A stretch of 34,644 nucleotides of DNA from Octopus sinensis (lineage: Eukaryota): positions 1 through 34,644 of the forward strand of contig NW_021831678.1 of assembly GCF_006345805.1 (NCBI RefSeq). The letters run 5' to 3'. This document shows, one piece after another, positions 218 through 34,201 of this stretch. Positions within the stretch are counted from its first letter, which is position 1, and each line of letters starts with the position of its first letter. The position numbers and the translations under genes were made by a program. The notes beneath the pieces are model-generated. The model did no database searches. It saw nothing but the letters and a program-made list of their open reading frames with translations, and was not told where the DNA came from.

Positions 218-618
218 AGGCGGCGAGCTGGCAGAAACGATAGCACGCCGGGCGAAATGCGTAGCCGTATTTCATCTGCCGTTACGTTCTGAGTTCAAAT
301 TCCGCCGAGGTCGAATTTGCCTTTCATTCTTTCGGGGTCGATTAAATTAAGTAGCAGTTACGCACTGGGGTCGATATAATCGACTTAATCCGTTTGTCTG
401 TCCTCGTTTGTCCCCTCTGTGTTTAGCCCCTTGTGGGTAGTAAAGAAATAGGTATTTCGTCTGCCGCTACGTTCTGAGTTCAAATTCCGCCGAGGTCGAC
501 TTTGCCATTCATCCTTTGAGGGTCGATAAATTAAGTACCAGTTGCGTACTGGGGTCAATCTAATCGGTTGGCCCCCTCCCCCAAAATTTCTGGCCTTGTG
601 CCTTGAGTAGAAAAGAAT
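218..618 (+). mobile_element. tRNA-derived SINE family A, dimeric copy (full monomer + 5'-truncated second monomer)
   Basis: Head GGCGGCGAGCTGGCAGAAACG, B-box-like GAGTTCAAATTCC twice; the same body recurs at 6147, 14833 and 19352. Confidence 0.9.
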
Positions 619-4119: not shown

Positions 4120-4515
4120 GTATGTGTGGCATGTAGCTTGCTTACCAACCACATGGTTCCGGATTCAGTCTCACTGCGTGGCACCTTGGGCAAGTGTCTT
4201 CTACTATAGCCTCGGGCCGACCAAAGCCTTGCGTGTGGATATGGTAGACGGAAACTGAAAGAAGCCCGTCGTATATATGTATGTATATATATATATAGGT
4301 GTGCGTGTTTGTGTGTGTGTGTTTGTGTGTCTGTGTTTGTACCCCTCCCCAACATCGCTTGACAACCGATGCTTGTGTGTTTACGTCCCCGATAAAAGAG
4401 AGACCAATAAAATAACTACTAGGCGTACAAAGACTAAGTCTTGGGGTCGATTTGCTCGACTAAAGACTATGCTCCAGCATGGCCGCAGTCAAATGACTGA
4501 AAGAAACAAAAGAAA
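4120..4515 (+). mobile_element. tRNA-derived SINE family B (internal microsatellite, LINE-like 3' hairpin)
   Basis: CCTTGGGCAAGTGTCTTCTACTATAGCC central domain, TA/TG tract, tail CCAGCATGGCCGCAGTCAAATGACTGAAA; 9 copies in the window. Confidence 0.9.
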
Positions 4516-7910: not shown

Positions 7911-8258
7911 CCCTCGGGTCGACCAAAATCTCGTGGGTAGAAACTGAAAGACGCCTAGCATGTATACATACATACATACACATATACATATATATATATA
8001 GAGAGAGAGAGCCATATAAATACGAGTGTGTATGTGTGTGCGCACGCGTGTCTGTGGATTTGTGCCTGTGTTTTCCGACACCGCCGCTTGACAACCGGTG
8101 TTGGTATGTTTGCTTCCCCGTAACTTAGCGATTCAGCAAAAGAGGCTGATGAAATAAGAAATAAGCACCAAGCTTAAAGAAGAAGTATTGAGCTTGATTC
8201 GTTTGACCAAGATTCTTGAGGTTAGTGCAGCAGTCTTAACGACTGAAGTAAATAAAAT
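7911..8258 (+). mobile_element. SINE family B, old 5'-truncated copy
   Basis: CCTCGGGTCGACCAAA...TTGACAACCGGTG...ACTTAGCG. Confidence 0.7.
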
Positions 8259-8261
8259 GTA

Positions 8262-8448
8262 TACTCTTTTACTTGTTTCATTTGACTGCGGCCATGCTGG
8301 ATCACCGCCTTTAGTCGAGCAAATCGACCCCAGGACTTATTCCTTGTAAGCCTAGTACTTATTCTATCGGTCTCTTTTGCCGAACCGCTAAGTTACAGGG
8401 ACGTAAACACATCAGCATCGCTTGTCAAGCGCTGTTGGGGAACAAACA

Positions 8449-8504
<56 letters not shown>

Positions 8505-8639
8505 CGACGGGCTTCTTTCAGTTTCAGTCTACCAAATTCACTCACAAGGCTTTGGTCGGCCCGAGGCTATAGTAGAAGACTGAACCCGGAACCATGTGGT
8601 TCGTAAGCAGGCTACTTACCACACAGCCGCTCCTACGCC

Positions 8640-8674: not shown

Positions 8675-10160
8675 GAAACAGATATATCTGTGTAGCAAGC
8701 AAAATATATAATTATATATAATTATATATAATTATTACTTAGCTTTTACACCATGGACAATACCTCAGCCTTATATAGTAAATAAAACAACTTCTTATAT
8801 TTATCAACTCTTAGAATTGAAACCGTATCTTCATAAAGCCCTTAACTATCGGTATCCTGACGTTGTGATATTCTATTTTCCTCCTCTTTCCCCACGTTCC
8901 TTGTTTTATAGAGAATCCAAACAGATCAGTACATCTATTGTTGCACTTATCAGTCGAGGTATTTTTTTGCGTTCTGTAAATATCTATATAGAATATAAAA
9001 TATAACGAAATATATAAAACTGGGGGGAAAGAAAAAAAAAATCTGTAAATAGAATAACTAAAATTTGTGAAGCAATTTCAAGCCTATATTTTGTTTCTAA
9101 CCTAGCATATCTTAATCTATAACCAGCTGTCATATGTTTTCTAAACACTGATCTAATAATCCCATTTAATAAATTATGTACAAGCTATCTATGTCGGAAG
9201 GTATTGGCAATATCGTAATGAAGAAATACAGCAACATACAAACATATGTGTAAACAGATATAATAAATAAACAAATTAAATAAAAAAAAGAAGAAGAAAG
9301 TAGAAAACTATTTGTAGAAGCCATATAAAGACATTCTTTCTGCCCAGAACTATAGTGAAAAGATAAGTAAAATTCGACAACAAGGAAAGTGAATTAGAAT
9401 TTAAAAATGTTGAAAATCCTACAAAAATAATGAAATTATTTAATATAATTGAGATAATACAGGTATACTCTATGTGTTTGTACTAATTCCTTATCACGTT
9501 CGATTTGTAAAGATTTCCAGAAACTTCATTACGAAAAGAGGCTTCTCTTATTTAACGAATGATGATTTTCGCGAATAAAAAAAAAAAAAAACAGATGTTG
9601 GAAAAAACAAACAGAAACAAAATTAATAGGGAAAGATAGAAAGAGAAAAGAAAGAGAGGGAAATAGATAGATACAGTGGAGGGGGTGCCAGAAAGAAAGA
9701 AAGATAGGAAGAATGGAAGAAGTAATAGGAAAAAAAAAACCCAACTAAAGTAATGAAATTGTAATGTAGAGATAAGGGTAAAAGGAAAAAAAGAAACAAT
9801 AAGAACGGATTGAGTTCGTTCAAGTGAGAGCCGGAGAATGACGCAAGTGTAGCAGAAATGGATTTATAAAAATCTAAAATGGCGTCATCGATGGATTGCG
9901 CAAATGGAACAACGCTAATATGACTACTACACGTTTAACCTATTAGATTTAATAGAGCAATGAAATATAATATATACATTAGATTGTGTACTGTCTCTTG
10001 AATAACTTTCAGTGTTCTTAACATTAAACGTCTTTATATTTTGTCTATATGTGTATGATAGGTGTATCGTGATCATATTTTTTATTGCTTAGAAGCAGGA
10101 GAGAAGGCAAAGGTCACTTCTTTATGAGGCCTTCCCAAACTGGTCGAAACTCTCATGGGT

Positions 10161-10541
10161 TACTCTTTTTTACTCTTTTACTTGTTTCAGTCATTTGACT
10201 GCGGCCATGCTGGAGCACCGCCTTTAGTCGAGCAAATCGACCCCGGGACTTATTCTATGTAAGCCCAGTACTTATTCTATCGGTCTCTTTTGCCGAACCG
10301 CTAAGTGACGGGGACGTAAACACACCAGCATCGGTTGTCAAGCAATGCTAGGGAGACAAACACAGACACAGAAACACATACACACACATACATTTATTCA
10401 TATATACGGCAGGCTTCTTTCAGTTTCCGTCTACCAAATCCACTCACAAGGCATTGGTCGGCCCGGAGCTATAGCAGAAGACACTTGCCCAAGATGCCAG
10501 TGGTTGGTTAGCAAGCTACTTACCACACAGCCACTCATGCG
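10161..10541 (-). mobile_element. SINE family B
   Basis: Reverse complement of the family B body; small deletion in the head. Confidence 0.9.
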
Positions 10542-11228: not shown

Positions 11229-11555
11229 CTGCGGCCATGCTGGAGCACCATCTTAAAGGGTTTCAGTCGAAGAAATCTACTCCAGAACTTATTCTTTGCA
11301 AGCCTAGTACTTCTTCTCTCGTTGTTTTTAGCTGAACCAGTAAGTTACGGGGACATAAACATACCTGTATCAGTTGTCAATAGATAGCGGGTGGATGGGG
11401 GGGGGCAGACTCACACACACACACACATATATATACATGACAGGCTTCTTTCAGTTTCCCTCTACCAAATCCATACACAAGGCTATGGTTGGCCCGAGAC
11501 TATAGTAGAAGACACTTTCCCAAGGTGCCACACAGTGGGACTGAACCCAGAACTA
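11229..11555 (-). mobile_element. SINE family B-related, degenerate
   Basis: GCGGCCATGCTGGAGCACC...CAAGGTGCCACACAGTGGGACTGAACCC. Confidence 0.75.
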
Positions 11556-13237: not shown

Positions 13238-13646
13238 TACTCTTTTACACTTTTACTTGTTTCAGTCATTTTGACTGTGGCCATGCTGGAGCACCGCCTT
13301 TAGTCGAGCAAATCGACCCCGGGACTTATTCTTTGTAAGCCCAGTACTTATTCTATCGGTCTCTTTTGCCGAACCGCTAAGTAACGAGGACATAAACACA
13401 CCAGCATCGGTTGTCAAGCAATGCTAGGGGGACAAACACAGACACACAAACATACACATACACACATATATATATATACATATATACGACAGGCTTCTTT
13501 CAGTTTCCGTCTACCAAATCCACTCACAAGGCATCGGTCGGCCCGGGGCTATAGCAGAAGACACTTGCCCAAGATGCCACGCAGTGGGACTGAACCCTGG
13601 ACCATGTGGTTGGTTAGCAAGCTACTTACCACACAGCCACTCCTGC
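13238..13646 (-). mobile_element. SINE family B, near full length
   Basis: Reverse complement of the family B body. Confidence 0.9.
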
Positions 13647-15625: not shown

Positions 15626-16901
15626 TCAGGTCTGTCCGAATTTTGAATAAAAAAACAAGTGATCAGATGTTATATTTGATTGAAATTAATCATCACTGTA
15701 CTTTCCATGATTATCTATGACTTCCTTCCATCTATTTACTAGTGTTTTAATCCCGTCAATGTAAAACTCTTTTGGTTTCAAAGCGAAGAACTCTGAAATG
15801 TCAGTTTCGATCTCCTCCTGGCTTGCGAAAGATATGCCCCCCAAATGATTGTGTAAACTACGAAACAAATATTAGTCTGAAGGATCAAGGTCAGGAGAAA
15901 AAGGTGGATGAGGATTTCTTTTCCAACCAAGCTCTTCGATGTTCTGTAATGCGATCTTTGCAGTGTGGGGTCGCACATTGTCCTGATGAAACCTCACACC
16001 TTTTCGATTCACTAAAGCGGGGCTTTTTTATTCAAAGCTTGGTTCAAACGCTGTAATTGCTGACAGTAGACTTGAACATTGATCGTTGCATTATGTGGTA
16101 ACAATTCAAAGTGAATTATTCCTTTGCAATCCCACCAGATAGAGAGAAGAACCTTTTCCCCATGAAGTTTCCTACTTGGTTGTGGTTGAGCATTTTCCCT
16201 TTTACCAAGCGACTGTTTACGACGTTTAACATTTCGATAGAAGATCCAATTTTCGTCACCAGTGACAAGTCTATCCAAAAAGGGTGGTACGAGTTCGCGA
16301 GAATGGAGAGAAGAGAAGATGTCAACACAGAATTCACGGTTGCTTTCAGACAATTCATGAGGCACCCATTTTCCAAGTTTAGGAACATTTCCAAGTTGTT
16401 GCAGATAATGATGAACAGTTGTATGGTTTGAACTAAGCTTTATTGCCAATTCTTCGACTAATAATGCAGGATTTTCTTCAAGTAATACCTCAAGGATCTT
16501 ATCATCAAACTCAACTTGACGTCCTGTTCGATCTTCATCTTCAAGGCTGAAATCTCCACTTCTGAATTTTGCAAACCATCTTCTGCAAGTTCTTTTATTC
16601 AAGCATTCTTTCCCATAAACTGAGTGCATGTTTCGAGTTGCTTCGGCTGCAAAGTTTTCTGTTTTGTACTCATAAAGCATTATGTGCTTCAAATGCTCTT
16701 TGGATACTTCCATATTAGAAAGGGTGTTAATCAAAGAAATTTTAATTCTATTATTCTGTAAAATAATATTTAATTAGGTTAAATGTACACAAATGCATAA
16801 AAATAATTTTCAATTCCATTAGAGATTCTAAAATTCTATTAAATTCCATTCAATTTAAAAAAAAAACGTAAAATCTGCTAGAACCTTATGGTATGACCTG
16901 A
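15626..16901 (-). mobile_element. Full-length mariner transposon (1276 bp)
   Basis: TA|TCAGGTC ... GACCTGA|TA termini with TA TSD; transposase inside. Confidence 0.9.
15686..16713 (-). pseudogene. Mariner transposase (DD34D), inactivated
   Basis: WVPHELS, LVTGDENW, HQDNVRPH, PFSPDLDPSD (34 residues between the last two D); frameshift near 16030 and in-frame TAA at 15872-15874. Confidence 0.95.
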
Positions 16902-21170: not shown

Positions 21171-21397
21171 TAGGCGTAGGAGTGGCTGTGTGGTAAGTAG
21201 CTTCCTTACCAACCACATGGTCCCGTGTTCAGTCTCACTGCATGACACCTTGGGCAAGTGTCTTTTACTATAGCCTCAGGCCGACCAAAGCCTTGTGAAT
21301 AGATTTGGTAGACGGAAACTGAAAGAAGCCCGTCGTATATATGTATATATATATGTATGTATGTATATGTATATATATATATATATGTGTGTGTGTG

Positions 21398-21428
<31 letters not shown>

Positions 21429-21595
21429 ATGTATGTGTGTGTGTTTACGTCCCCATAACTTAGAGGTTTGGCAAAAGAGACCGATAGAATAAGTACTAGG
21501 CTTACAAAAAGTAAGACCCAGGGTCGATTTGCTCGACTAAAAGATGATGCTCCAGCATGGCCACAATCAAATGACTGAAACAAGTAAGTAAAGAG
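21171..21595 (+). mobile_element. SINE family B, full length
   Basis: TAGGCGTAGGAGTGGCTGTGTGG head to ATGACTGAAACAAGTAA tail. Confidence 0.9.
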
Positions 21596-21665
21596 AGAGA
21601 CCTATGTTCCTTTCAATTTCTCTATAAATGCCGTGCTAAACGAAAGGTTCCTTTCTCAAATTTAC

Positions 21666-22089: not shown

Positions 22090-23270
22090 ATAATAATTTT
22101 CCAGATACTCTATCTTCTAATTAGCCTTAAGATTAAATTAAATAACGTTTAATATTGATACCGTCAAATTAGCCTTAGGATTAAATTAAATAACGTTTAT
22201 ATTGTTTAATATTGTTAATAATTATTGTTAATTAGCCTTAAGATTAAATTAAATAACGTTTAATATTGATACCGTCAAATTAGCCTTAGGATTAAATTAA
22301 ATAACGTTTAATATTGTTTAATATTGTTAATAATTATTGTTAATTAGCCTTAAGATTAAATAAATAACGTTTAATATTGTTTTAATATTGTTAATAATTT
22401 TTCAGATACTCTATCTTCTAATTAGCCTAAGATTAAATTAAATAACGTTTAATATTAAAAACGTCTAATTAGCCTTAGGATTAAATTAAATAACGTTTAA
22501 TATTGTTAATAATTATTGTTAATTAGCCTTAGGATTAAATTAAAAACGTTTAACATTGTTTAATATTGTTAATAATTACTGTTATTAGCCTTAAGATTAA
22601 ATTAAATAACGTTTAATTTGTTTTAATATTGTTAATAATTCTTCAGATACTCTATCTTCTAATTAGCCTTAAGATTAAATTAAATAACGTTTAATATTAC
22701 CCACACTCTAATATAATATTAACATTGCTAATATATTTTCAGATACTCTATCTCCTGATTAGCCTTAAGATTAAATAACGTTTTTATCCACACTCTAATA
22801 TAATATTAATATTGCTAATATATTTTCAGATACTCTATCTTCTAATTAGCCTTAAGATTAAATTAAATAACGTTTAATATTAATAACGTCTAATTAGCCT
22901 TAAGATTAAATTAAATAACGGTTAATATTGCTTAATATTGTATATATAATTTTTCAGATACTCTGTCTTCTAATTAGCCTTAAGATTAAATTAAATAACG
23001 TTTAATATTACCAACACTCTAATATAATATTAATATTGCTAATATATTTTCAGATACTCTATCTCCTAATTAGCCTTAAGATTTAACAACGTTTTTATCC
23101 ACACTCTAATATAATATTAATATTGCTAATACATTTTCAGATACTCTATCCTCCCCCCTAATTAGCCTTAAGATTAAATAACGTTTTTACCCAAATAACG
23201 TTTTTACACACAAACTTTAATATTGTTAATATTTCTTTTTCAAGTACTCTATCTTCTAATTAGCCTTAAT
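22090..23270 (+). repeat. AT-rich tandem array, 17 copies of core TAATTAGCCTTAAGATTAAATTAAATAACGTTT
   Basis: TTAGCCT counted 17 times; linkers drawn from a few recurring types. Confidence 0.9.
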
Positions 23271-23331: not shown

Positions 23332-24244
23332 ATGTCCAGAGCATGGAGACGTGACGAGCTGGATTTATTCGTACGAGCATGGGAGTGCGCCGGCGGAGAT
23401 AGCCCTAGGGAGGTGATTGCGGCTGCGCTGAAGAGCAGAGGCTACAAGAGGACAGCGGCTCAGATGGAGCGAAAGAGACAGGAATTCGTGCGCTCATATG
23501 CGCTTGTACGGTCGCACATTGGCGCACTTGATGCCATCTTTGAGAACGAGCGGAGCAAAGATGGCAAGAATGGAGACGATGAAAGAAGTCACCCCCACCT
23601 GGTGGGGACGCCGGGAGGAGGTTTTGAATGAGAAACCTGCCCGGGAAGTGAACCCAGGTGCAAGTTCTCCAACCGGCAGCAAGGGCCATGGAGACGGAGA
23701 ACCCGGTGAAGAGGTAGAGGGAGGAAGAAGAACTAAAAGAAGGACTGGAAGAGCTAAAGGAACAGAAAAAGCTCAAGCAGGACCAAAGTGTGAAACAACC
23801 AGAAATAGAAGTGGAACCGCAAAGGATGGAACCAAACAGCGCACACGGGTGTGTATGTTCTACCTGAGAGGTTCTTGCTGGCATGGAAAGGAAGGTTCAG
23901 GCTGCCGCTTTGCACATCGGGGACCCTGCCACAGAGACACGAGGCAGATGGACAAACCATCAACACAAAGAAAAGGGATGGACCACGCACCACCTGCCCC
24001 AAAACGGAGGTACGCAGATGTTGTGCGCGCCACAAACAGCCAACATGATGTTGTCGAAAGAGCAGCTGCTGAGCAACAATCTTTTTTGTGCATGGCACAA
24101 AAGATTGTACAGCAGCTGACCTGGCTTCATCAAACCCAAGCCCGCAGGTGGGACTACCCACTATATACCAGACCACCACAGCAAACAGACACAGGATGGA
24201 CACCGCCGGCAACAACGTACACCTCACCTCGATACTCCTACTGA
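23332..24244 (+). pseudogene. LINE ORF1: Myb/SANT(trihelix)-like N-terminus + CCCH zinc finger; one frameshift near 23550
   Basis: W..E...F..AW....IA..L..RGY.RT..Q..RK...F..SY pattern; C-x7-C-x8-C-x3-H (CMFYLRGSCWHGKEGSGCRFAH). Confidence 0.7.
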
Positions 24245-27180
24245 ACATCAGAGGACTGCAAACACTCAGTAACAGGACAAAGATCCCGTTCCTGAGAGAC
24301 TTTGTTGCATGCAATCAAGCCTTATGCATAGCACTTACAGAAACGCACCTGAAACCGGACATAGCAGATGCGGAGTTACACATACCACAGTATGCTGTAC
24401 TACGGACCGACAGGAAAGAAAGGAGTCATGGAGGTGTTGCTATGTACATCCGTGAGGACCTCACACCCCAGGTCCTCTTGTCATACTCAAACTCGGTGTG
24501 TGACACACTAATTGTACATATTAGGCAACTTGATGTAGTTGTGTGTGCTACATATCGCCCTCCAGATGCCCCAAGCCATGTGGGCAAGTTTGAAGACTGC
24601 CTTATAAAAATAGAAGAAATTCTAACCACATTAGAGCAACACATAGGTGTGCTTCTTATGGGAGACTTCAATCTGCCAATGTCAGATGGCCCGAGGGCCT
24701 TTCTCTCCCAGGATGACAAGATGTGAACGAGGACAGGCGAGGTCCCTCCTGAACCTCATCAACACCCTGTACATGGAGCAGGTAATACTCCAACCAACCA
24801 GGGCAGGTAACACACTGGATCTCTGCTTCACAAATGACATGGATCTCATCCATAATGTGAAAGTGACACCGACACTACTCTCGGATCACAACATGATAGA
24901 GCTGACCATGTACGGGCCAAAAGAGAGCACGGACATGCAGCCTACAAGAAACCCTCAAAATCTTTCCAGCTTGAACTACCATAAGGCAAACTGGAAACAA
25001 ATTGAGAAAGAGATCCGCAAAACAAAATGGCCTAAATGTCTCTCCTCGCCAGACATCGACGTGAAACTTCAACAATTCATGTCTGTAATGCAAGCCATAT
25101 GCTACAAATGTGTCCCAGAGAGAAAGGCCACTGTACACAAGAACAAAATCCCCAGAGAGAGGAAAATCTTAATGAGACGGCGTACGAAATTTTCAAATCG
25201 CCTAAACAAACAGATTGAAAGCAGTGAAAAGTCCCGCCTAAAAATAAAACTGTTGGAAATCGAAAAATGTCTGCAACTCTCCATGAAAAAGAAAGAGCAG
25301 ACAAAGAAGCCTGGGCTATAGAAAACATAAAATCTAACCCCAGAGCTTTCTACAGGTATGCCAAAGAAACAGCTACAGTGCACTGTAGAATAGGGCCACT
25401 CCTCGAAAAGGATGGCACACTTACAGGAAAACCAATGAGGGTAAGTGAAATACTGAATGAGCAATTCAAGAGTGTTTTCACTCCACCCCTTGGGCATCTC
25501 CAAATCACCAATCCAACTGACTTTTTTACCACTGCAGATATAAAATCAGGCGGCGACGATAGAGATTACATCGATAAAGGAAGACGATGTAACAAGGCTA
25601 TAGATGAAATGAAAACAGACTCAGCTACTGGCCCCGATGGATTCCCGGCAATCCTCCTAAAAGCATGTAAGAGAGTCCTAGCAAGACCACTGCAGTTCCT
25701 CTTTCAGAGCTTCCTTGCAGCTGGCAAACTTCCAGGAAAACTGAAGGAAGGTAAAATATGCCCCATTCATAAAGGAGGTAGCAGAGCGGAAGCCAAGAAC
25801 TATAGACCTATCTCTCTGACCTCACACATCAGCAAGGTCATGGAACGAATAGTCAGAAGGAAGCTGATCACCTTCCTTGAAGAGAATGACTTGCTGCCCG
25901 ACACCCAACATGGTTTCCGACCAGGAGAAGCTGTTTAACTCAGCTCCTACAACACTATGACTGGGTGCTGAAACGGCTGCTCAACCACTCAAATGTGGAA
26001 GTGATATATCTCGACTTTGCAAAGCCTTTGATAAAGTCGATCATGGAATGATATGTCACAAACTGCGTGATCTCAACATAGTTGGAAAACTGGGAGAATG
26101 GCTTCATGACTTTCTGAAGGATAGAAGTCAGGTGGTAGTAGCCAATGGGGCCACTCCATTAACACACAAATAGTGAGCGGTGTTCCGCAGGGCACTGTTC
26201 TGGGACCACTACTGTTCATAATGGCCTCTCAGACATGTCCTCAGCCACGCAGAGAGCCACGATCACAAGTTATGCAGATGATACAAACGTTTCACAGGCA
26301 ATACAGAACCCTGAGGACACTAAACACCTGCAATGTGAGCTGGACAAAATATACAAGTGGGCTGAAAAGAATAGCATGCAGTTCAATGCTGGAAAGTTTC
26401 AAGCTTTATACTATCAGCATGCAAAACTGAATGCAATACCCAATGAATACACTGGACCCGGAGGGATTGCAATCCCAGAGGCACAATCAGTGCGTGACCT
26501 GGGTATTCACATGAGTGATGACGCGACCTTTCATGTACATGTTGCTAAAATGACAATGAAATGTAGACGGCTGGCTGGATGGATTCTTAGAACCTTTAGA
26601 ACAAGAGAACAAAAAACCATGATGGTCCTCTGGAAGACACTTGTCCTAAGCGCGCTTTGACTATTGCTCTCAGCTATGGTCACCATCCAGTGTCAAGTTG
26701 ATCACAGAACTTGAGGCGATCCAACGAAGCTACACAAAGAAGATAGCCTCTATGCAGAATGTAAGCTACTGGGAAAGACTCAAGAGATTAAAATTATATT
26801 CTCTGGAGCGTAGGCGGCAAAGATATGCCATAATATACATCTGGAAGATCCTGGAGGGAAGTGTCCTGAACTTTGGCATCGAGAGTTACGCAAATGCCAG
26901 AACTGGGCGCCACTGCGTGGTGCCTAGGACTCCAACCTGCCATCAAGATGTAGGACAAGATTCTGTGATAGCCTGGGCTTCCGAGGCCCACAGCTCTTCA
27001 ATATCCTCCCGAAGAACCTGAGAGACCTGCATGGGGTGGATACAGATGTCTTTAAAATGAAGCTGGATCTCTTCCTGTCAGGTGTCCCAGATGAACCAAT
27101 TCACGGCGGGAGGGGCAGATGAGGGCAGCTGCTCGAACTCTCTCATGCACCAAATAGCAGTTGCTAGAAAGCCTCCATGA
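24196..27180 (+). pseudogene. LINE ORF2 (AP endonuclease + reverse transcriptase), multiple frameshifts
   Basis: LLNIRGL, LTETHL, YRPPD, GDFNLP, TLDLCFT, NYRPISLTS, QHGFRPG, SGVPQGTVLGPLLF, YADDT, LYSLERRRQRY. Confidence 0.95.
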
Positions 27181-28224: not shown

Positions 28225-29238
28225 TGATCTAGTAATCTCAAGATTAATCAGCCGAAATTACTACGATGATCCGGTTCTTGACTGAAGACTGAGGGTTTCG
28301 AATGTCCTGTCCGTGTTTATTGTATCGTCTTCTAAGAGTTATACGTTCTTGTCCATGTTGTATTTTTCTACATACCTTAACATATATTCCAGGCCACGTA
28401 CCCTCTTAACATTAATGTGAGCACATATTCTTAATAACTGGTACGACTCTTTGTTTGTCTCTCTCTCTCTCTCACTTTTACTTGATCTGTCCCCTTCTCT
28501 CTCTACTCATCCTCTTTTTCTCTTCTCTTTCCTCTGATTCTTTGGTCTAATCTTCCACTACCCTCCTATTTCTTTGTCTCGCTCTGCACTCACAGGTCAA
28601 TCTTCGACACCCATCCCTTCTCCTCTCTGATTCCTTCTTTCTCTCTCTTCTCTCTCTTTGTTGCGTTTGTCCCTCCTCTCTCTCTCTCCTCTCTCTCTCT
28701 TCCGTTGCTTCTCTTTCTTTTCTTTTCTCTCTTCTCTGTCACGTGACTGCTGGCCGAAATCTGCCTTTCAGCTTCTGACCAGCGTCGTGTTAACATCGTT
28801 GTTTTTCGTCCGCCGCTATAGGCATCGCCGATAAGGCTCCTTTCCTTGCGCCAGAGAAAAAATTTGTTTGCTTGTTATCAGTCGTAAGACACTTGTTGTT
28901 GTTTTCACCGTTAATGCTTCTGTATTTCATGTTTCTGTATTCCATTATTTTTTTGTTTTTTTATATTCGTCCCTTTTGCTGTCCTGGTGTCCGTATGCAT
29001 TCGATCCTTCTTCCAGGAAATCTACGCTCCCAGCTTACTTTTTCTAATGCTCGTTGCTTAGTTTTTCTTGGAGGGCTGGCCGTGATCTAGTAATCTCAAG
29101 ATTAATCAGCCGAAATTACTACGATGATCCGGTTCTTGACTGAAGACTGAGGGTTTCGAATGTCCTGTCCGTGTTTATTGTATCGTCTTCTAAGAGTTAT
29201 ACGTTCTTGTCCATGTTGTATTTTTCTACATACCTTAA
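28225..29238. mobile_element. 1014-bp non-coding element with identical 156-bp terminal direct repeats (pseudo-LTR/TRIM-like)
   Basis: 28225-28380 = 29083-29238 base for base; flanked by (TA)n on both sides. Confidence 0.85.
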
Positions 29239-29256
29239 TATATATATATATATATA

Positions 29257-29304
<48 letters not shown>

Positions 29305-29306
<2 letters not shown>

Positions 29307-29405
29307 GGGAGATTCTTCTTATAGTAGAAGAAATAGCTAAATTTTTTGGCTGCTATTTCTAAAAGCTCGGTAAGTGTAAAAGCAATTTTTTTTGCTGAAC
29401 CCTAA
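29305..29405 (+). repeat. Fragment of the repeat that also follows the 33430 hammerhead
   Basis: TAGTAGAAGAAATAGCTA...GCTATTTCTA...GCTGAAC matches 33618-33712. Confidence 0.75.
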
Positions 29406-29904
29406 TTATATAAAGTAATATATATACATATATATATATATATATTTATATTTTTATATATATATATATATATGTATGTATAGATGCATGTGTAGTGTTT
29501 GTATGTATGGATATCGTGGAGAGAGATTAGCTTCTATTAGCGGAATTATTTGCTCATGGATTATTGTGTAAGGGGCTACAATTTTCAGATGTAGAACCAG
29601 CATGACAGCATGTGACAGGATTCCAATATTTATTTAGCGTTACAATCACCCAGGTGGGGCCTTTTTTTATTTCAGTTACTGTCTGTCTAACACAATTCAC
29701 CACGAAAAGGCTGGCCTGGCACTTTAAAACGGACCCGTGCACAACGTGCGTCAAGGGTTGGGATCGAACTCGAGACGCTGTGATTACCAGAAAAACTTTT
29801 TCACTCTATGATGTGCGTGTGTCTCTTTCTCACTCTTTCTGTACATATGTGTGTGTGTATGTGTGTGTGTGTGTGTGTGTGTGTTTGTATGTGTTTGTGT
29901 GTGT

Positions 29905-30483: not shown

Positions 30484-30535
30484 ATTCATATTGATTTAAA
30501 ATAAAACATTTCACCTTAAAACTTGTAATATCTAT

Positions 30536-30921
30536 ATTCTTTTACTTGTTTCAGTCATTTGACTGCAGCCATGCTGGAGCACCGCCTTTAATCGAGCAAA
30601 TCGACCCCGGGACTTATTCTTTGTAAGCCTAGTACTTATCCTATTAGTCTCTTTTGCCGAACCGCTAAGTGACGGGGACGTAAACACACCAGCATCGGTT
30701 GTCAAGCAATGCTAGGGGGACAAACACAGACACACATATATATATATACATATATACGACAGGCTTCTTTCAGTTTCCGTCTACCATATCCACTCACAAG
30801 GCATTGATCGGCCCAGGGCTATAGCAGAAGACACTTGCCCAAGATGCCACGCAGTGGGACTGAACCCGGAACCATGTGGTTGGTTAGCAAGCTACATACC
30901 ACGCAGCCACTCCTGCGCCTA
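30536..30921 (-). mobile_element. SINE family B, full length
   Basis: Reverse complement of the family B body. Confidence 0.92.
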
Positions 30922-33056: not shown

Positions 33057-33277
33057 TGCGAGGGTGTGTAGAAAGGTTCCTGGTTGCAGGTAAAGTAAAA
33101 GACGGGAGGAACAGTTAATTATGAGTTTATTCAATATAGCCCGGTTTCAGACTCACACACATGTTGCAGCAGTCCTTCATTTTTACTAAGCCCTGTAAAA
33201 GAATTCGGACGGTTGGGTCTCCAACCATGCCTTTTGTGATACCCTTAAAACTAGGTATTTGTCAGCGCTCCCATGTA
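33057..33277 (-). mobile_element. Mini-mariner (about 220 bp) retaining the transposase C-terminus
   Basis: CGAGGGTGTGTAGAAAGGTTCCTGG terminus, degenerate partner at 33245-33277; minus strand reads AWLETQPSEFFY. Confidence 0.6.
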
Positions 33278-33429
33278 TATATATATATATAATATATATA
33301 TAATATATATATTTCACAAATTTGAATTCGGTGATACTAGTGAGGATTCTAGCTCGCTCTGATACTGAGTTGAGTTGGTACCTCCTAGTATCTCAAAATT
33401 CAATATATAATCATTTATGATTATAGTAT

Positions 33430-33536
33430 TCCACGCTGAAGAGAAAAGAAGTTTCGGTAAGATAGAATTATTTAATATTTAATATTTTAATTCTTCTGCT
33501 TTCCTAAAACTTGATTTCGAAACGTACGTCCGTGGA
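33430..33536 (+). ncRNA. Type I hammerhead ribozyme, intact catalytic core
   Basis: Stem I TCCACG/CGTGGA; CTGAAGA 33436-33442; long stem II closed by G33443-C33518; GAAA 33519-33522; palindromic stem III ACGTACGT; GUC cleavage after 33530. Confidence 0.85.
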
Positions 33537-33768
33537 TAACTTTAAAAATGTTTGATAGATTGCGGTTAATTCATTCTCTCTTACCTGTTGTGTCAGCCTT
33601 CCAATTGCTGGTTTTACTGAGATCTTCCTTTTAGTAGAAGAAATAGCTATAACCCTTTGACTGCTATTTCTAAATTCGGTATTGTGGTAAGGCAATTCGT
33701 TGCTGAACACTTATTGCTTAGTATTACTTATATATATATACATATATATATATATCATAAACATATTT

Positions 33769-33991
33769 TACTCTCTTTATTCTTTACATGTTTCAGTCAT
33801 TTGACCGCGGTCATACTGGAGCACCGCCTTTATTCTTTGTAAGCCGAGTACTTATTCTATCGATCTCTTAGGACGAACCGCTAAGTTACGGGAACGCAAA
33901 CATACCAGCATCGGTTGTCAAGCGATATTGGGGGGGGACAAACACAAACACAGACACACACACACACATATACACACATACATAGACACAG

Positions 33992-34034
<43 letters not shown>

Positions 34035-34188
34035 CACATATACACGTATACAAAGGGCTTCATTGAGTTTCCGTCTACCAAATCCACTCACAAGGCTTTG
34101 GTCGGCCCGAGGCTATAGTAGAAAACACTTGCCCAAGGTGCCACGCAGTGGGACTGAACCTGGAACCAAGTGGTTAGTAAGCAAGCTA
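33769..34188 (-). mobile_element. SINE family B, 5'-truncated
   Basis: Reverse complement of the family B body. Confidence 0.9.
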
Positions 34189-34201
34189 TCTATTACGTGT
34201 T

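What the first reader, a model, noticed from the sequence alone, without database searches (positions are those of the whole stretch)
33430..33536. Intact hammerhead ribozyme with an unusually long stem II and a dimer-type stem III
Seen: all conserved hammerhead nucleotides are in the correct register (CUGAAGA, G10.1-C11.1, GAAA, GUC) with a 6-bp stem I. Stem II is a roughly 75-nt AT-rich rod (GAAA/TTTC, AAGTTT/AAACTT, AGAATTA/TAATTCT) instead of the usual short hairpin. Stem III is the perfect palindrome ACGUACGU with only a 2-nt loop. Established: type I hammerheads with palindromic stem III occur in Penelope-like elements and retrozymes and can cleave as double hammerheads. Inference: this is a still-functional self-cleaving RNA in a roughly 400-bp non-coding element (about 33313-33720) between (TA)n tracts.
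Basis: partly seen in the sequence, partly recalled or inferred. Interest (0 to 1): 0.85.

Follow-up and report, generated by a model that had tools for sequence, protein, structure and literature searches.

The report
Hammerhead ribozyme in octopus retrozyme repeat
The motif is an intact type I hammerhead ribozyme sequence, sitting in a truncated solo copy of a young, roughly 601-bp non-coding tandem repeat of Octopus sinensis that inserts into (TA)n microsatellites like a Penelope-type retroelement; it is a new example of a known kind (animal "retrozymes"), with an unusually long helix II.

Summary
Window 33430-33536 (+) has every hammerhead core nucleotide in register, a 6-bp helix I, a 76-nt helix II rod and the palindrome ACGUACGU as helix III, with C17 at 33530. 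Rfam scores it below threshold (21.7 bits against 34) and finds it only in a short scan.

The "400-bp element" is the 3' 70% of a ~601-bp unit with one hammerhead per unit. The genome is Octopus sinensis. It holds at least 1,151 exact copies of the cleavage-site 28-mer, in tandem arrays and solo copies.

At least 1,007 insertions end in (TA)n at three preferred 3' ends (unit positions 414, 420 and 517). None ends at the ribozyme cut site. Their 5' ends vary. Inverted pairs are always head-to-head (23 to 0), and in 22 of 23 pairs the two arms end at different sites. Local Penelope-like elements also end in (TA)n.

The circular unit RNA is predicted to be unusually structured (z = -6.6) and has no ORF over 80 aa.

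Best reading: a non-LTR retrozyme whose dimer-type hammerhead processes multimeric transcripts. The window copy is intact in sequence but is a dead-end fragment. Catalysis, circles and the mobilising enzyme are inferred, not shown.

The parts
33276..33312 (.). Upstream (TA)n microsatellite: the 5' flank and target remnant of the insertion
   Evidence: TRF, and sequence. Every sampled array or solo copy of the family is flanked by (TA)n on both sides.
33313..33730 (+). 5'-truncated solo copy (unit positions 1-420 of ~601) of the hammerhead-bearing repeat, with 8 differences from the family consensus
   Evidence: BLAST against array units. Differences from the consensus are listed. Its 3' junction TTGCTTAGTATTACTTA|TATATATA is one of 193 identical junctions in the genome.
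33430..33536 (+). Type I hammerhead ribozyme motif, 107 nt
Evidence: Rfam RF00163, 21.7 bits, model positions 1-45 of 45. Also found by the descriptor scan.
33430..33435 (+). Helix I, 5' strand (UCCACG). Helix I may continue beyond a 2x2 internal loop into the flanks.
   Evidence: The extended fold of 33400-33570 continues the pairing.
33436..33442 (+). Core C3-A9: CUGAAGA, with N7 = A
   Evidence: The 7-nt string is unchanged in 95 of the 98 sampled genomic copies; three show a single base difference or 1-nt gap within it.
33443..33518 (+). Helix II domain, 76 nt: 4 bp GAAA/UUUC, an AG/GA internal loop, then an imperfect A/U-rich rod
   Evidence: Folds: -13.1 kcal/mol, z = -1.8 against shuffles. 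The window-specific A>C at 33496 lies in a predicted internal loop.
33519..33521 (+). Core G12 A13 A14
33522..33529 (+). Helix III palindrome ACGUACGU (A15.1 to U16.1). It is not stable as a hairpin and forms an 8-bp duplex between two copies.
   Evidence: the hairpin alone gives 0.0 kcal/mol, the duplex -9.8, and the cofold gives the double-hammerhead topology.
33530..33530 (+). C17: the predicted cleavage is 3' of this base
   Evidence: Register of the motif
33531..33536 (+). Helix I, 3' strand (CGUGGA)
33639..33671 (+). Hairpin AGAAAUAGC/GCUAUUUCU in the 3' module of the unit (unit positions ~309-405). The module is shared at 78% identity with a sister repeat at window 29309-29407.
   Evidence: Circular fold and BLAST. 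The stems are identical in the two families and the loops differ.
33731..33756 (.). Downstream (TA)n, the 3' flank. The junction is blurred by TA microhomology.

Best explanation
Window 33430-33536 is a genuine type I hammerhead ribozyme sequence. It belongs to a high-copy, very young, non-coding ~601-bp repeat of Octopus sinensis that behaves as an animal 'non-LTR retrozyme'.

**Proposed cycle.**
1. Tandem arrays are transcribed on the hammerhead-sense strand.
2. Neighbouring hammerheads pair through their palindromic helix III into double hammerheads and cut after C17. This releases ~601-nt units.
3. A host RNA ligase closes the units into highly structured circles.
4. A Penelope-like element's GIY-YIG nuclease nicks a (TA)n microsatellite.
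5. Its reverse transcriptase starts cDNA synthesis at preferred sites of the RNA (unit positions 414, 420 and 517). It runs round the circle, or along an uncut multimer, and stops at variable points.

This would give arrays or sub-unit fragments with fixed 3' ends and ragged 5' ends. It often gives two head-to-head arms with different 3' ends.

The window copy is one such product: a single 0.7-unit arm ending at position 420.

**Shown here:** the motif, the unit, the copy numbers, the insertion architecture, the target, the strand-specific predicted structure, the absence of coding capacity, and abundant local Penelope-like elements that share the target.

**Inferred:** catalysis, dimer dependence, circularisation, reverse transcription, and the identity of the mobilising enzyme.
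For: **Motif.** All core positions and three helices are present. Chance gives 0 of 300 shuffles as good. The hammerhead fold is essentially the MFE.

**Family.**
- The unit is ~601 bp with one hammerhead each, in arrays of up to at least 18 units on many chromosomes.
- The 28-mer across the cut site occurs 1,151 times exactly; the reversed control gives 0.
- Copies are 96-100% identical and the core is near-invariant (3 of 98 copies carry a single difference in CUGAAGA).

**Retroelement-type architecture.**
- (TA)n flanks both sides.
- Exact 3' junctions number 514 (position 414), 193 (position 420) and 300 (position 517).
- There are 0 junctions at the most TA-rich internal site.
- There are 0 and 0 at the ribozyme cut site.
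- 5' ends are scattered.
- Ten of 31 loci have both orientations, and all ten are head-to-head.
- On two chromosomes there are 23 head-to-head and 0 tail-to-tail pairs (p = 2e-7). In 22 of 23 pairs one arm ends at 517 and the other at 414/420; 42% is expected (p = 9e-8).

**Match to Penelope-like elements.**
- The literature describes a (TA)n preference, inverted 5'-truncated copies and a one-sided 'tail' (PMC8557442).
- This genome has at least 4,846 GIY-YIG candidates, with ORFs up to 883 aa.
- L078 carries RVT_1 plus a C-terminal GIY-YIG.
- In five sampled copies, the 3' end ...ACAAATA (truncated to ...CTTCTTT in L072) abuts (TA)n directly in four; L076 carries a ~45-nt tail before its (TA)n, and two 5'-truncated copies start right after (TA)n.

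**RNA.**
- The circular (+) unit folds at -160.4 kcal/mol, z = -6.6. The (-) strand gives z = -3.0 and ten control segments give -2.6 to +1.0.
- The longest ORF in tandem copies is 80 aa.

**Dimer type.** The helix III hairpin is unstable, and the cofold gives a double hammerhead at -12.4 kcal/mol relative to two monomers. This is the known behaviour of animal type I hammerheads (PMC4209133, PMC7229834).

**Comparison between families.** Two other octopus hammerhead families have different helix I, II and III sequences. They keep complementarity and the helix III palindrome (ACGUACGU, ACGAUCGU, ACAUGUGU).
Against: - The Rfam score is below the gathering threshold, and the match disappears in larger scans.
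- There is no covariation within the family because the copies are too alike.
- The helix II rod is only marginally more stable than shuffles (z = -1.8).
- No expression, cleavage or circle data could be examined.
- No sequence similarity was found between the unit and the 12 Penelope-like loci in hand, so the partner element is unidentified.
- None of those loci has a canonical hammerhead.
- Fixed 3' ends with none at the cut site fit an uncut multimeric transcript as template as well as a circle. The hammerhead's role in mobility is therefore not demonstrated.
- The read-through marker at unit position 414-425 is twice as frequent (2,340) as the hammerhead 28-mer (1,151). This is only partly explained.
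Confidence: 0.8

Rival explanations
1. It is ordinary satellite DNA spread at the DNA level: unequal exchange, and rolling-circle amplification with reinsertion of extrachromosomal circles at fragile (TA)n tracts. The hammerhead would be a relic or passenger with no role.
For: The arrangement is tandem with a ~600-bp period and very high homogeneity. (TA)n tracts are break-prone, and the junctions show TA microhomology. No RNA evidence is available.
Against: - DNA-level spread does not predict three sharply preferred ends on one side (1,007 junctions) with ragged ends on the other.
- It does not predict zero junctions at the most TA-rich internal site.
- It does not predict exclusive head-to-head pairing with systematically different arm ends.
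- It does not predict hundreds of short 3'-terminal fragments.
- The strand-specific predicted structure (z -6.6 against -3.0) and a near-invariant core (95 of 98 copies) point to an RNA-level function.
Confidence: 0.1
2. The motif is a chance or decayed hammerhead look-alike that does not cleave. The 76-nt helix II and the unstable helix III would make it catalytically dead, and the repeat spreads without it.
For: - The score is below the Rfam threshold.
- Minimal hammerheads from Penelope-like elements show low activity in vitro even as dimers (PMC4209133).
- No insertion ends at the cut site, so processing is not needed to explain the insertions.
- Canonical helix II is 4 bp with loop-loop contacts, and those may be lost here.
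Against: - None of 300 shuffles gives a motif this good.
- The core and helices I and III are unchanged in nearly all of the 98 sampled units (core in 95), and the cut-site 28-mer is exact in 1,151 copies.
- The first 4 bp of helix II plus an internal loop mimic the canonical helix II and loop 2. A second octopus family shows the same design, derived from a canonical short hammerhead by an insert inside loop 2.
- The hammerhead fold survives in the MFE of the whole circular unit.
Confidence: 0.15
3. The repeat is cargo or the terminal part of another mobile element that targets AT/TA sites, such as a Helitron or Helentron. Alternatively it is simply the terminal repeat of an autonomous Penelope-like element rather than a non-autonomous retrozyme.
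For: The insertions lie in TA. There is a hairpin about 50-90 nt before the preferred 3' end. Hammerheads of Penelope-like elements lie in terminal repeats (PMC4209133).
Against: - There is no fixed 5' end and there are three alternative 3' ends.
- No Helitron-type termini were seen at the junctions.
- Arrays of up to at least 18 units have no ORF over 80 aa.
- The sampled 1.5-kb flanks of 30 loci show microsatellite and unrelated DNA rather than further family sequence; they were not screened for RT or EN genes.
- The unit has no similarity to 12 Penelope-like loci.
Confidence: 0.05

Closest known systems
Animal non-LTR retrozymes (Cervera & de la Pena 2020, PMC7229834; Li, Clavereau & Pollet 2026 preprint, 10.64898/2026.07.22.740005)
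   Same: - Non-coding tandem repeats with one type I hammerhead per unit.
- High copy number, with a mix of multimers and solo copies.
- A strongly self-paired predicted unit RNA.
- Coexistence with Penelope-like elements.
- The dimer-type helix III seen in amphibian retrozymes.
   Different: - The unit is ~601 nt, against the 170-400 nt first described, though it lies inside the 51-972 bp range of the 2026 survey.
- Helix II is a 76-nt domain instead of about 4 bp plus a loop.
- No paper in the searchable library reports such an element in a cephalopod.
- Circles and expression were not tested here.
Hammerheads and insertion architecture of Penelope-like elements (Cervera & de la Pena 2014, PMC4209133; Craig et al. 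2021, PMC8557442)
   Same: - A type I hammerhead with a palindromic helix III that is expected to act as a dimer.
- (TA)n target preference and 5' truncation.
- Partial tandems.
- An inverted 5'-truncated copy placed head-to-head.
- An extension ('tail') at only one end of the insertion.
   Different: - There is no RT/EN ORF in the unit.
- The one-sided extension is about 100 nt (positions 415-517) rather than 30-40 bp.
- No sequence similarity was found to the sampled octopus Penelope-like elements.
- Those elements carry only a degenerate hammerhead-like block in the 3' UTR.
Hammerhead-bearing satellites: newt satellite 2, Schistosoma Sm-alpha, Dolichopoda pDo500 (PMC2837043)
   Same: Transcribed-type tandem repeats of a few hundred bp with one type I hammerhead. 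Double-hammerhead models have been proposed for them.
   Different: Those hammerheads are about 45-50 nt with a short helix II. The insertion-site signatures shown here were not part of their description.
Rfam RF00163 Hammerhead_1
   Same: The match is full length (model positions 1-45) with all conserved positions. The consensus helix III, ACGcgCGU, is of the same palindromic type.
   Different: A 72-nt insert replaces about 10 consensus loop positions. The score is 21.7 against a gathering score of 34, and the match is lost by the speed filters in larger scans.
Plant LTR retrozymes and viroid-like circular RNAs (PMC4918200)
   Same: The unit RNA size (600-1000 nt in plants). Processing of multimers into circles by a hammerhead. 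Dependence on an autonomous retroelement.
   Different: Those have type III hammerheads, LTRs, primer-binding sites, Ty3-type partners and target-site duplications. None of these features is seen here.

Membership tests
Hammerhead ribozyme, type I | Conserved core: C3 U4 G5 A6 N7 G8 A9, G12 A13 A14, A15.1-U16.1, H17 not G, G10.1-C11.1 | tested here: met
   CUGAAGA, G...C, GAA, A...U and C17 are all in register. The 5' core string CUGAAGA is unchanged in 95 of 98 sampled units, and the 3' core positions show no base substitution (a few 1-nt gaps only).
Hammerhead ribozyme, type I | Three helices around the core, with helix I open (5' and 3' ends in helix I) | tested here: met
   Helix I is 6 bp and helix II is a 76-nt closed domain. 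Helix III is a closed palindrome but is not stable as a hairpin, as in most animal type I hammerheads (PMC4209133).
Hammerhead ribozyme, type I | Score at or above the Rfam RF00163 gathering threshold | tested here: not met
   The score is 21.7 bits against 34. No hit appears at gathering or in a 1,251-nt scan. The shortfall coincides with the 72-nt insert in helix II.
Hammerhead ribozyme, type I | Compensatory changes that preserve the helices | tested here: inconclusive
   The copies are too similar. An older long-helix-II family showed no covariation in 9 decayed copies. Only between families are helices I-III different yet still complementary or palindromic.
Hammerhead ribozyme, type I | Site-specific self-cleavage | not testable with these tools
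   This needs in vitro transcription or mapping of RNA ends.
Animal non-LTR retrozyme | Non-coding tandem repeat units, each with one type I hammerhead | tested here: met
   The period is ~601 bp with one hammerhead per unit. The longest ORF is 80 aa. The window itself holds only 0.7 of a unit.
Animal non-LTR retrozyme | Unit size in the described range | tested here: met
   The 601-bp unit is outside the original 170-400 nt (PMC7229834) but inside the 51-972 bp of the 2026 survey.
Animal non-LTR retrozyme | Highly self-paired unit RNA | tested here: met
   The circular MFE is -160.4 kcal/mol, 64% paired, z = -6.6. Controls give -2.6 to +1.0. This is a prediction only.
Animal non-LTR retrozyme | Expressed as linear and circular unit-length RNAs | not testable with these tools
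   No transcriptome data are reachable.
Animal non-LTR retrozyme | Co-occurrence with autonomous Penelope-like elements | tested here: met
   There are at least 4,846 GIY-YIG candidates with ORFs up to 883 aa. RVT_1 plus a C-terminal GIY-YIG is seen in L078.
Animal non-LTR retrozyme | Sequence relationship to the terminal repeat of a Penelope-like element | tested here: inconclusive
   No similarity was found to 12 loci, but these represent few families. Only a short TTAC(N2-3)ATA-like resemblance exists at the 3' ends. No more genome sequence could be fetched.
Penelope-type insertion signature | Preference for (TA)n targets | tested here: met
   All sampled junctions lie in (TA)n, and there are 1,007 exact junctions. 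In five sampled local Penelope-like copies, four 3' ends abut (TA)n directly and the fifth (L076) reaches (TA)n after a ~45-nt tail.
Penelope-type insertion signature | Defined 3' end, variable 5' truncation, partial tandems | tested here: met
   Three preferred 3' ends against scattered 5' ends.
Penelope-type insertion signature | Head-to-head inverted 5'-truncated copy, and an extension at one end only | tested here: met
   There are 23 head-to-head and 0 tail-to-tail pairs. In 22 of 23, one arm ends at 517 and the other at 414/420. The extension is ~100 nt rather than 30-40 bp.
Helitron/Helentron | Fixed 5' and 3' termini with a subterminal 3' hairpin, inserted between A and T | tested here: not met
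   The 5' ends are variable and there are three 3' ends. The only hairpin lies about 50-90 nt from the end.

The most novel reading that the evidence does not exclude
The family may be a currently active cephalopod retrozyme whose insertions preserve the footprint of its integration mechanism.

Two target-DNA ends of one nicked (TA)n site would each prime reverse transcription on the same circular or multimeric RNA, at different preferred sites (414/420 and 517). This would give head-to-head arms that are each a rolling-circle product. If so, it would be genomic evidence for how Penelope-type enzymes build their odd tandem and inverted structures.

The 76-nt helix II would be a functional add-on. 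It has arisen at least twice in octopus by insertion into loop 2, and it may serve as a stability or recognition domain rather than as junk.
Probability: 0.3. Interest if true: 0.65.

Novelty: new member of a known kind. Interest (0 to 1): 0.45.

Why it matters
**Why the family is likely to be missed.** Standard annotation is likely to overlook it, because the long helix II pushes the Rfam score below threshold and the speed filters drop the match. None of the papers found in the searchable library describes hammerheads or retrozymes in cephalopods, including a 2026 Octopus vulgaris repeat annotation.

**What the family offers.** It is large (over 1,000 insertions) and extremely young. It could be a good natural system for three open questions:
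- whether animal retrozymes really move through RNA circles;
- which Penelope-like enzyme moves them;
- how the tandem and inverted insertion structures arise.

**On the hammerhead itself.** The family gives a natural test of how much helix II can be extended while the loop-2 position is kept as an internal loop.

**For the scan.** The window copy is an ordinary dead-end fragment of this family.

Tried and rejected
- **Rfam.** The scan at gathering thresholds found nothing. Only a 511-nt E-value scan shows the hammerhead. A 1,251-nt scan of two array units shows no family at all, so no second ribozyme class was detected.
- **Covariation within the family.** This was impossible: 98 unique units differ by about 0.2 non-consensus bases per site, much of it 1-nt indels.
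- **Covariation in the older long-helix-II family.** Nine copies gave only 7 invariant or broken pairs, which is uninformative.
- **Second hammerhead or minus-strand hammerhead.** None was found in the window.
- **Coding capacity.** None.
- **Link to an autonomous partner.** The unit has no BLAST similarity to 12 Penelope-like loci. None of them gives an Rfam hammerhead at E <= 1. A single descriptor hit in L075 lies on the strand opposite to the ORF and was judged weak.
- **Similarity to the other hammerhead loci.** None between the unit and loci L034-L071.
- **Linear self-cleaved unit as integration template.** Rejected: there are 0 junctions at the cut site on either side.
- **3' ends set by TA microhomology alone.** Rejected: there are 0 junctions at the richest TATATA site.
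- **Cricket pDo500 hammerhead as a long-helix-II precedent.** Rejected: it is 49 nt.
- **Fetching more of the genome.** I did not try to reach the same DNA through other tools.
- **Related species.** No other cephalopod genome is reachable with these tools.
Full report
**1. The observation**

The sequence at window 33430-33536 (+) reads UCCACG | CUGAAGA | G...(76 nt)...C | GAA | ACGUACGU | C | CGUGGA.
- Every conserved hammerhead position is in register: C3-A9 with N7 = A, G10.1-C11.1, G12 A13 A14, A15.1/U16.1 and C17.
- Helix I is 6 bp.
- ViennaRNA's minimum free energy fold of the 107 nt is the hammerhead fold except for helix III (-19.9 against -19.8 kcal/mol when constrained).
- Helix II starts with 4 bp (GAAA/UUUC), then an AG/GA internal loop, then an imperfect A/U-rich rod. 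Alone it gives -13.1 kcal/mol with z = -1.8, which is only marginal.
- In a longer context, helix I continues beyond a 2x2 internal loop. This is the usual layout of natural type I hammerheads.

**2. Is it more than chance?**

- My own descriptor asks for CUGANGA, GAAA within 130 nt, helix I >= 4 bp, helix II >= 3 bp, helix III >= 2 bp and H17 not G. It finds one hit on both strands of the window.
- In 300 block-wise dinucleotide shuffles it gives 0.017 hits per window, and none as good as the real one.
- Rfam is less kind. There is nothing at gathering thresholds. RF00163 gives 21.7 bits (gathering 34), E = 0.011, only when 511 nt are scanned, with a 72-nt insert in helix II.
- A 1,251-nt scan of two array units reports nothing at E <= 1.
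- So the motif alone would not be significant genome-wide. The case rests on the family context.

**3. What the 400-bp element is**

- The genome is a 2.72-Gb eukaryote with 13,516 contigs.
- It is Octopus sinensis. A LINE reverse-transcriptase relative named as an O. sinensis protein lies on a contig of 174,423,281 bp, which is the length of G000:C3.
- Window 33313-33720 matches dozens of places at about 98% identity.
- These places are tandem arrays with a ~601-bp period. About 190 bp of each unit is missing from the window copy.
- The window copy is therefore unit positions 1-420 only: a solo, 5'-truncated fragment. It has 8 differences from the consensus. One lies in the hammerhead (33496 A>C), in a predicted internal loop.
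- The 28-mer spanning the cut site occurs 1,151 times exactly (596 forward, 555 reverse). The reversed control gives 0.
- The first 100 of these fall in 31 loci: 10 solo and 21 multi-copy, with up to 18 units.
- Ninety-eight unique units from 18 loci differ by about 0.2 non-consensus bases per site. The hammerhead core is near-invariant: three of the 98 units carry a single difference within CUGAAGA.

**4. How it spreads: what is shown**

*Flanks and ends.*
- All sampled array ends lie in (TA)n on both sides.
- In hammerhead-sense orientation, the 3' ends cluster at unit positions 409-420 and 517, while the 5' ends are scattered.

*Genome-wide exact junction counts.*

| Junction or marker | Count |
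|---|---|
| Position 414 + (TA)n | 514 |
| Position 420 + (TA)n (the window's type) | 193 |
| Position 517 + (TA)n | 300 |
| Most TA-rich internal site | 0 |
| Ribozyme cut site, 3' side | 0 |
| Ribozyme cut site, 5' side | 0 |

- The ends are therefore site-specific. They are not set by TA microhomology alone, and the integrated template was not a self-cleaved linear unit.
- Many 3' junctions have no hammerhead nearby, as expected for short 5'-truncated copies (searches compared).

*Inverted pairs.*
- When both orientations occur at one locus they are always head-to-head. This holds for 10 of 10 loci. On chromosomes C1 and C2 there are 23 head-to-head and 0 tail-to-tail pairs among 187 junctions (p = 2e-7).
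- In 22 of 23 pairs, one arm ends at 517 and the other at 414/420. Random pairing predicts 42% (p = 9e-8).
- This amounts to a one-sided ~100-nt extension.

**5. Comparison with Penelope-like elements**

- Craig et al. 2021 describe, for Penelope-like elements, partial tandems, an inverted 5'-truncated copy upstream, a 30-40-bp 'tail' often at one end only, and (TA)n as the preferred target of Neptune and Naiad elements (PMC8557442).
- The octopus genome has at least 4,846 GIY-YIG candidate places, with open frames up to 883 aa.
- In five sampled copies of that family, the 3' end ...TTTTTTACAAATA abuts (TA)n directly in three (L078, L079, L083). L072 ends earlier (...CTTCTTT) but also abuts (TA)n, and L076 carries an extra ~45-nt tail before its (TA)n.
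- Two 5'-truncated copies start right after (TA)n.
- So the local elements share the target and the truncation pattern with the hammerhead repeat.
- I could not find sequence similarity between the unit and the 12 Penelope-like loci in hand. The partner is therefore unidentified.
- A small resemblance exists at the ends: TTACAAATA, TTACGGATA and TTACTTA. It is only a hint.

**6. RNA properties (predicted)**

- As a circle, the 601-nt sense RNA folds at -160.4 kcal/mol. It is 64% paired, with z = -6.6 against dinucleotide shuffles.
- The antisense strand gives z = -3.0. Ten control segments of the window give -2.6 to +1.0.
- The hammerhead's helices I and II persist in that fold.
- The 414-420 end site lies in the longest predicted single-stranded stretch. 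Position 517 lies at the edge of a hairpin loop.
- Tandem copies have no ORF longer than 80 aa.

**7. Dimer-type helix III**

- ACGUACGU cannot form a stable hairpin (0.0 kcal/mol).
- Two copies form an 8-bp duplex (-9.8 kcal/mol).
- Cofolding two hammerheads gives the classical double-hammerhead topology, with swapped helix I strands, at -12.4 kcal/mol relative to two monomers.
- This is the normal state of animal type I hammerheads: helix I of 6 bp, helix II of 4 bp, and a helix III of 1-2 bp with a palindromic loop that is active as a dimer in tandem repeats (PMC4209133). Amphibian retrozymes behave the same way (PMC7229834).

**8. The long helix II**

- This is the feature that departs from the canon.
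- The genome also holds a canonical short family: GUAC CUGAAGA GACCC AGAAY GGGUC GAAA CAUGUG UY GUAC. It occurs in units of about 230-430 bp, sometimes tandem or inverted.
- An older family is the same hammerhead with a ~62-nt insert inside loop 2: GACCC AGA[CUGC...GCAG]AAU GGGUC.
- The window's family has the same design: 4 bp, a small internal loop, then an extension.
- Long helix II domains have therefore arisen or been kept at least twice here, with the loop-2 position retained as an internal loop.
- Whether that preserves the loop 1-loop 2 contacts is untested.

**9. Most likely mechanism and its limits**

- The best-supported reading is a non-LTR retrozyme. Arrays would be transcribed, cut by double hammerheads into units, circularised by a host ligase, and copied into (TA)n sites nicked by a Penelope-like enzyme.
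- Priming at fixed RNA sites followed by rolling-circle or multimer copying would explain arrays at each new site.
- The data show the insertion architecture and the motif. They do not show cleavage, circles or reverse transcription.
- An uncut multimeric transcript would fit the junction data as well as a circle.

**10. Novelty**

- Retrozymes with type I hammerheads are established in cnidarians, molluscs (mussels), arthropods and amphibians. Recorded unit lengths run from 51 to 972 bp.
- Full-text searches found no paper that describes hammerheads or retrozymes in octopus. A 2026 O. vulgaris repeat annotation that lists Penelope-like families does not mention ribozymes.
- I file this as a new member of a known kind. 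It has two points of specialist interest: the helix II extension, and the asymmetric two-arm insertion footprint.

Noticed in passing
window 29305-29412 (+), between (TA)n tracts at 29238-29304 and 29413-29470: A short element 78% identical to unit positions 309-405 of the hammerhead repeat, with the same hairpin stems and a different loop. It ends at the equivalent 3' site. It belongs to its own family (~157 bp matches at 89-93% identity). Some copies are spaced ~578 bp apart and some are in inverted pairs on G000:C12703. It may be a sister retrozyme family sharing a 3' module.
   Followed up: partly
window 29150-29237 (+): The 3' end of another repeat with many 97-100% identical copies in the genome. 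It stops exactly at the same (TA)n tract, so it may be a further (TA)n-targeting element.
   Followed up: no
L078 about 510-560 (- strand); same block in L079, L072, L076, L083: The best-conserved block of the 3' UTR of the octopus Penelope-like element looks like a degenerate hammerhead: UUGAUAA GGUUC...GAACC GAAA CAUGU. It has U3 and A8 instead of C3 and G8, which is a pair that could still form. It lies about 120 nt from the element's end. L083 has a further change at position 4, and L072 at G12.
   Followed up: partly
L078, L079, L083, L072, L076 (Penelope-like 3' ends): Three copies (L078, L079, L083) end in ...TTTTTTACAAATA fused to (TA)n, and L072 ends earlier (...CTTCTTT), also fused to (TA)n. 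L076 has an extra ~45-nt tail before the (TA)n. L076 and L083 are 5'-truncated copies that begin right after (TA)n.
   Followed up: yes
L034-L063 (G000, many chromosomes): A canonical short type I hammerhead family of 42-48 nt scores up to 48 bits, above the Rfam threshold. It sits in ~230-430-bp units at 73-92% identity. There are tandem copies 431 bp apart (C16) and close inverted pairs.
   Followed up: partly
L064-L071 (G000): An older hammerhead family with a ~75-nt helix II. It derives from the short family by an insert inside loop 2 and is often found as head-to-head inverted pairs. Many copies have U at position 17 or core damage.
   Followed up: partly
G000 genome-wide: The read-through marker at unit positions 401-425 occurs 2,340 times, against 1,151 for the hammerhead 28-mer. 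Truncated copies ending at 517 explain only part of the excess. Further 3' ends, or another family sharing this segment, are likely.
   Followed up: no
window 23432-26660 (+): A degraded non-LTR retrotransposon with its frames broken into pieces. It has a weak Torus/zinc-finger-like ORF1 region, an AP-type endonuclease (Exo_endo_phos) and a reverse transcriptase (RVT_1). Its closest named relatives are in Octopus sinensis and Argonauta hians.
   Followed up: partly
window 16012-16773 (-): A mariner/Mos1-type transposase remnant (HTH_48 plus Transposase_1), truncated.
   Followed up: partly
window 33830-34190 and at least 7 further places (4134-4502, 8085-8577, 10160-10499, 11289-11547, 13238-13624, 21198-21597, 30531-30894): A SINE-like repeat with an internal (CA/TA) microsatellite, at 80-90% identity between copies. 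One copy lies directly downstream of the hammerhead fragment's (TA)n flank.
   Followed up: partly
window 22118-23193: An A/T-rich (21% G+C) complex minisatellite with nested periods of 48, 64, 87, 111, 242 and 311 bp.
   Followed up: no
window 33250-33760 compared with L032 2500-3750: Method note. The same hammerhead is reported by the Rfam E-value scan of 511 nt but not by the scan of 1,251 nt or of the whole window. Hammerheads with a long helix II are likely to be under-counted by routine Rfam annotation.
   Followed up: yes
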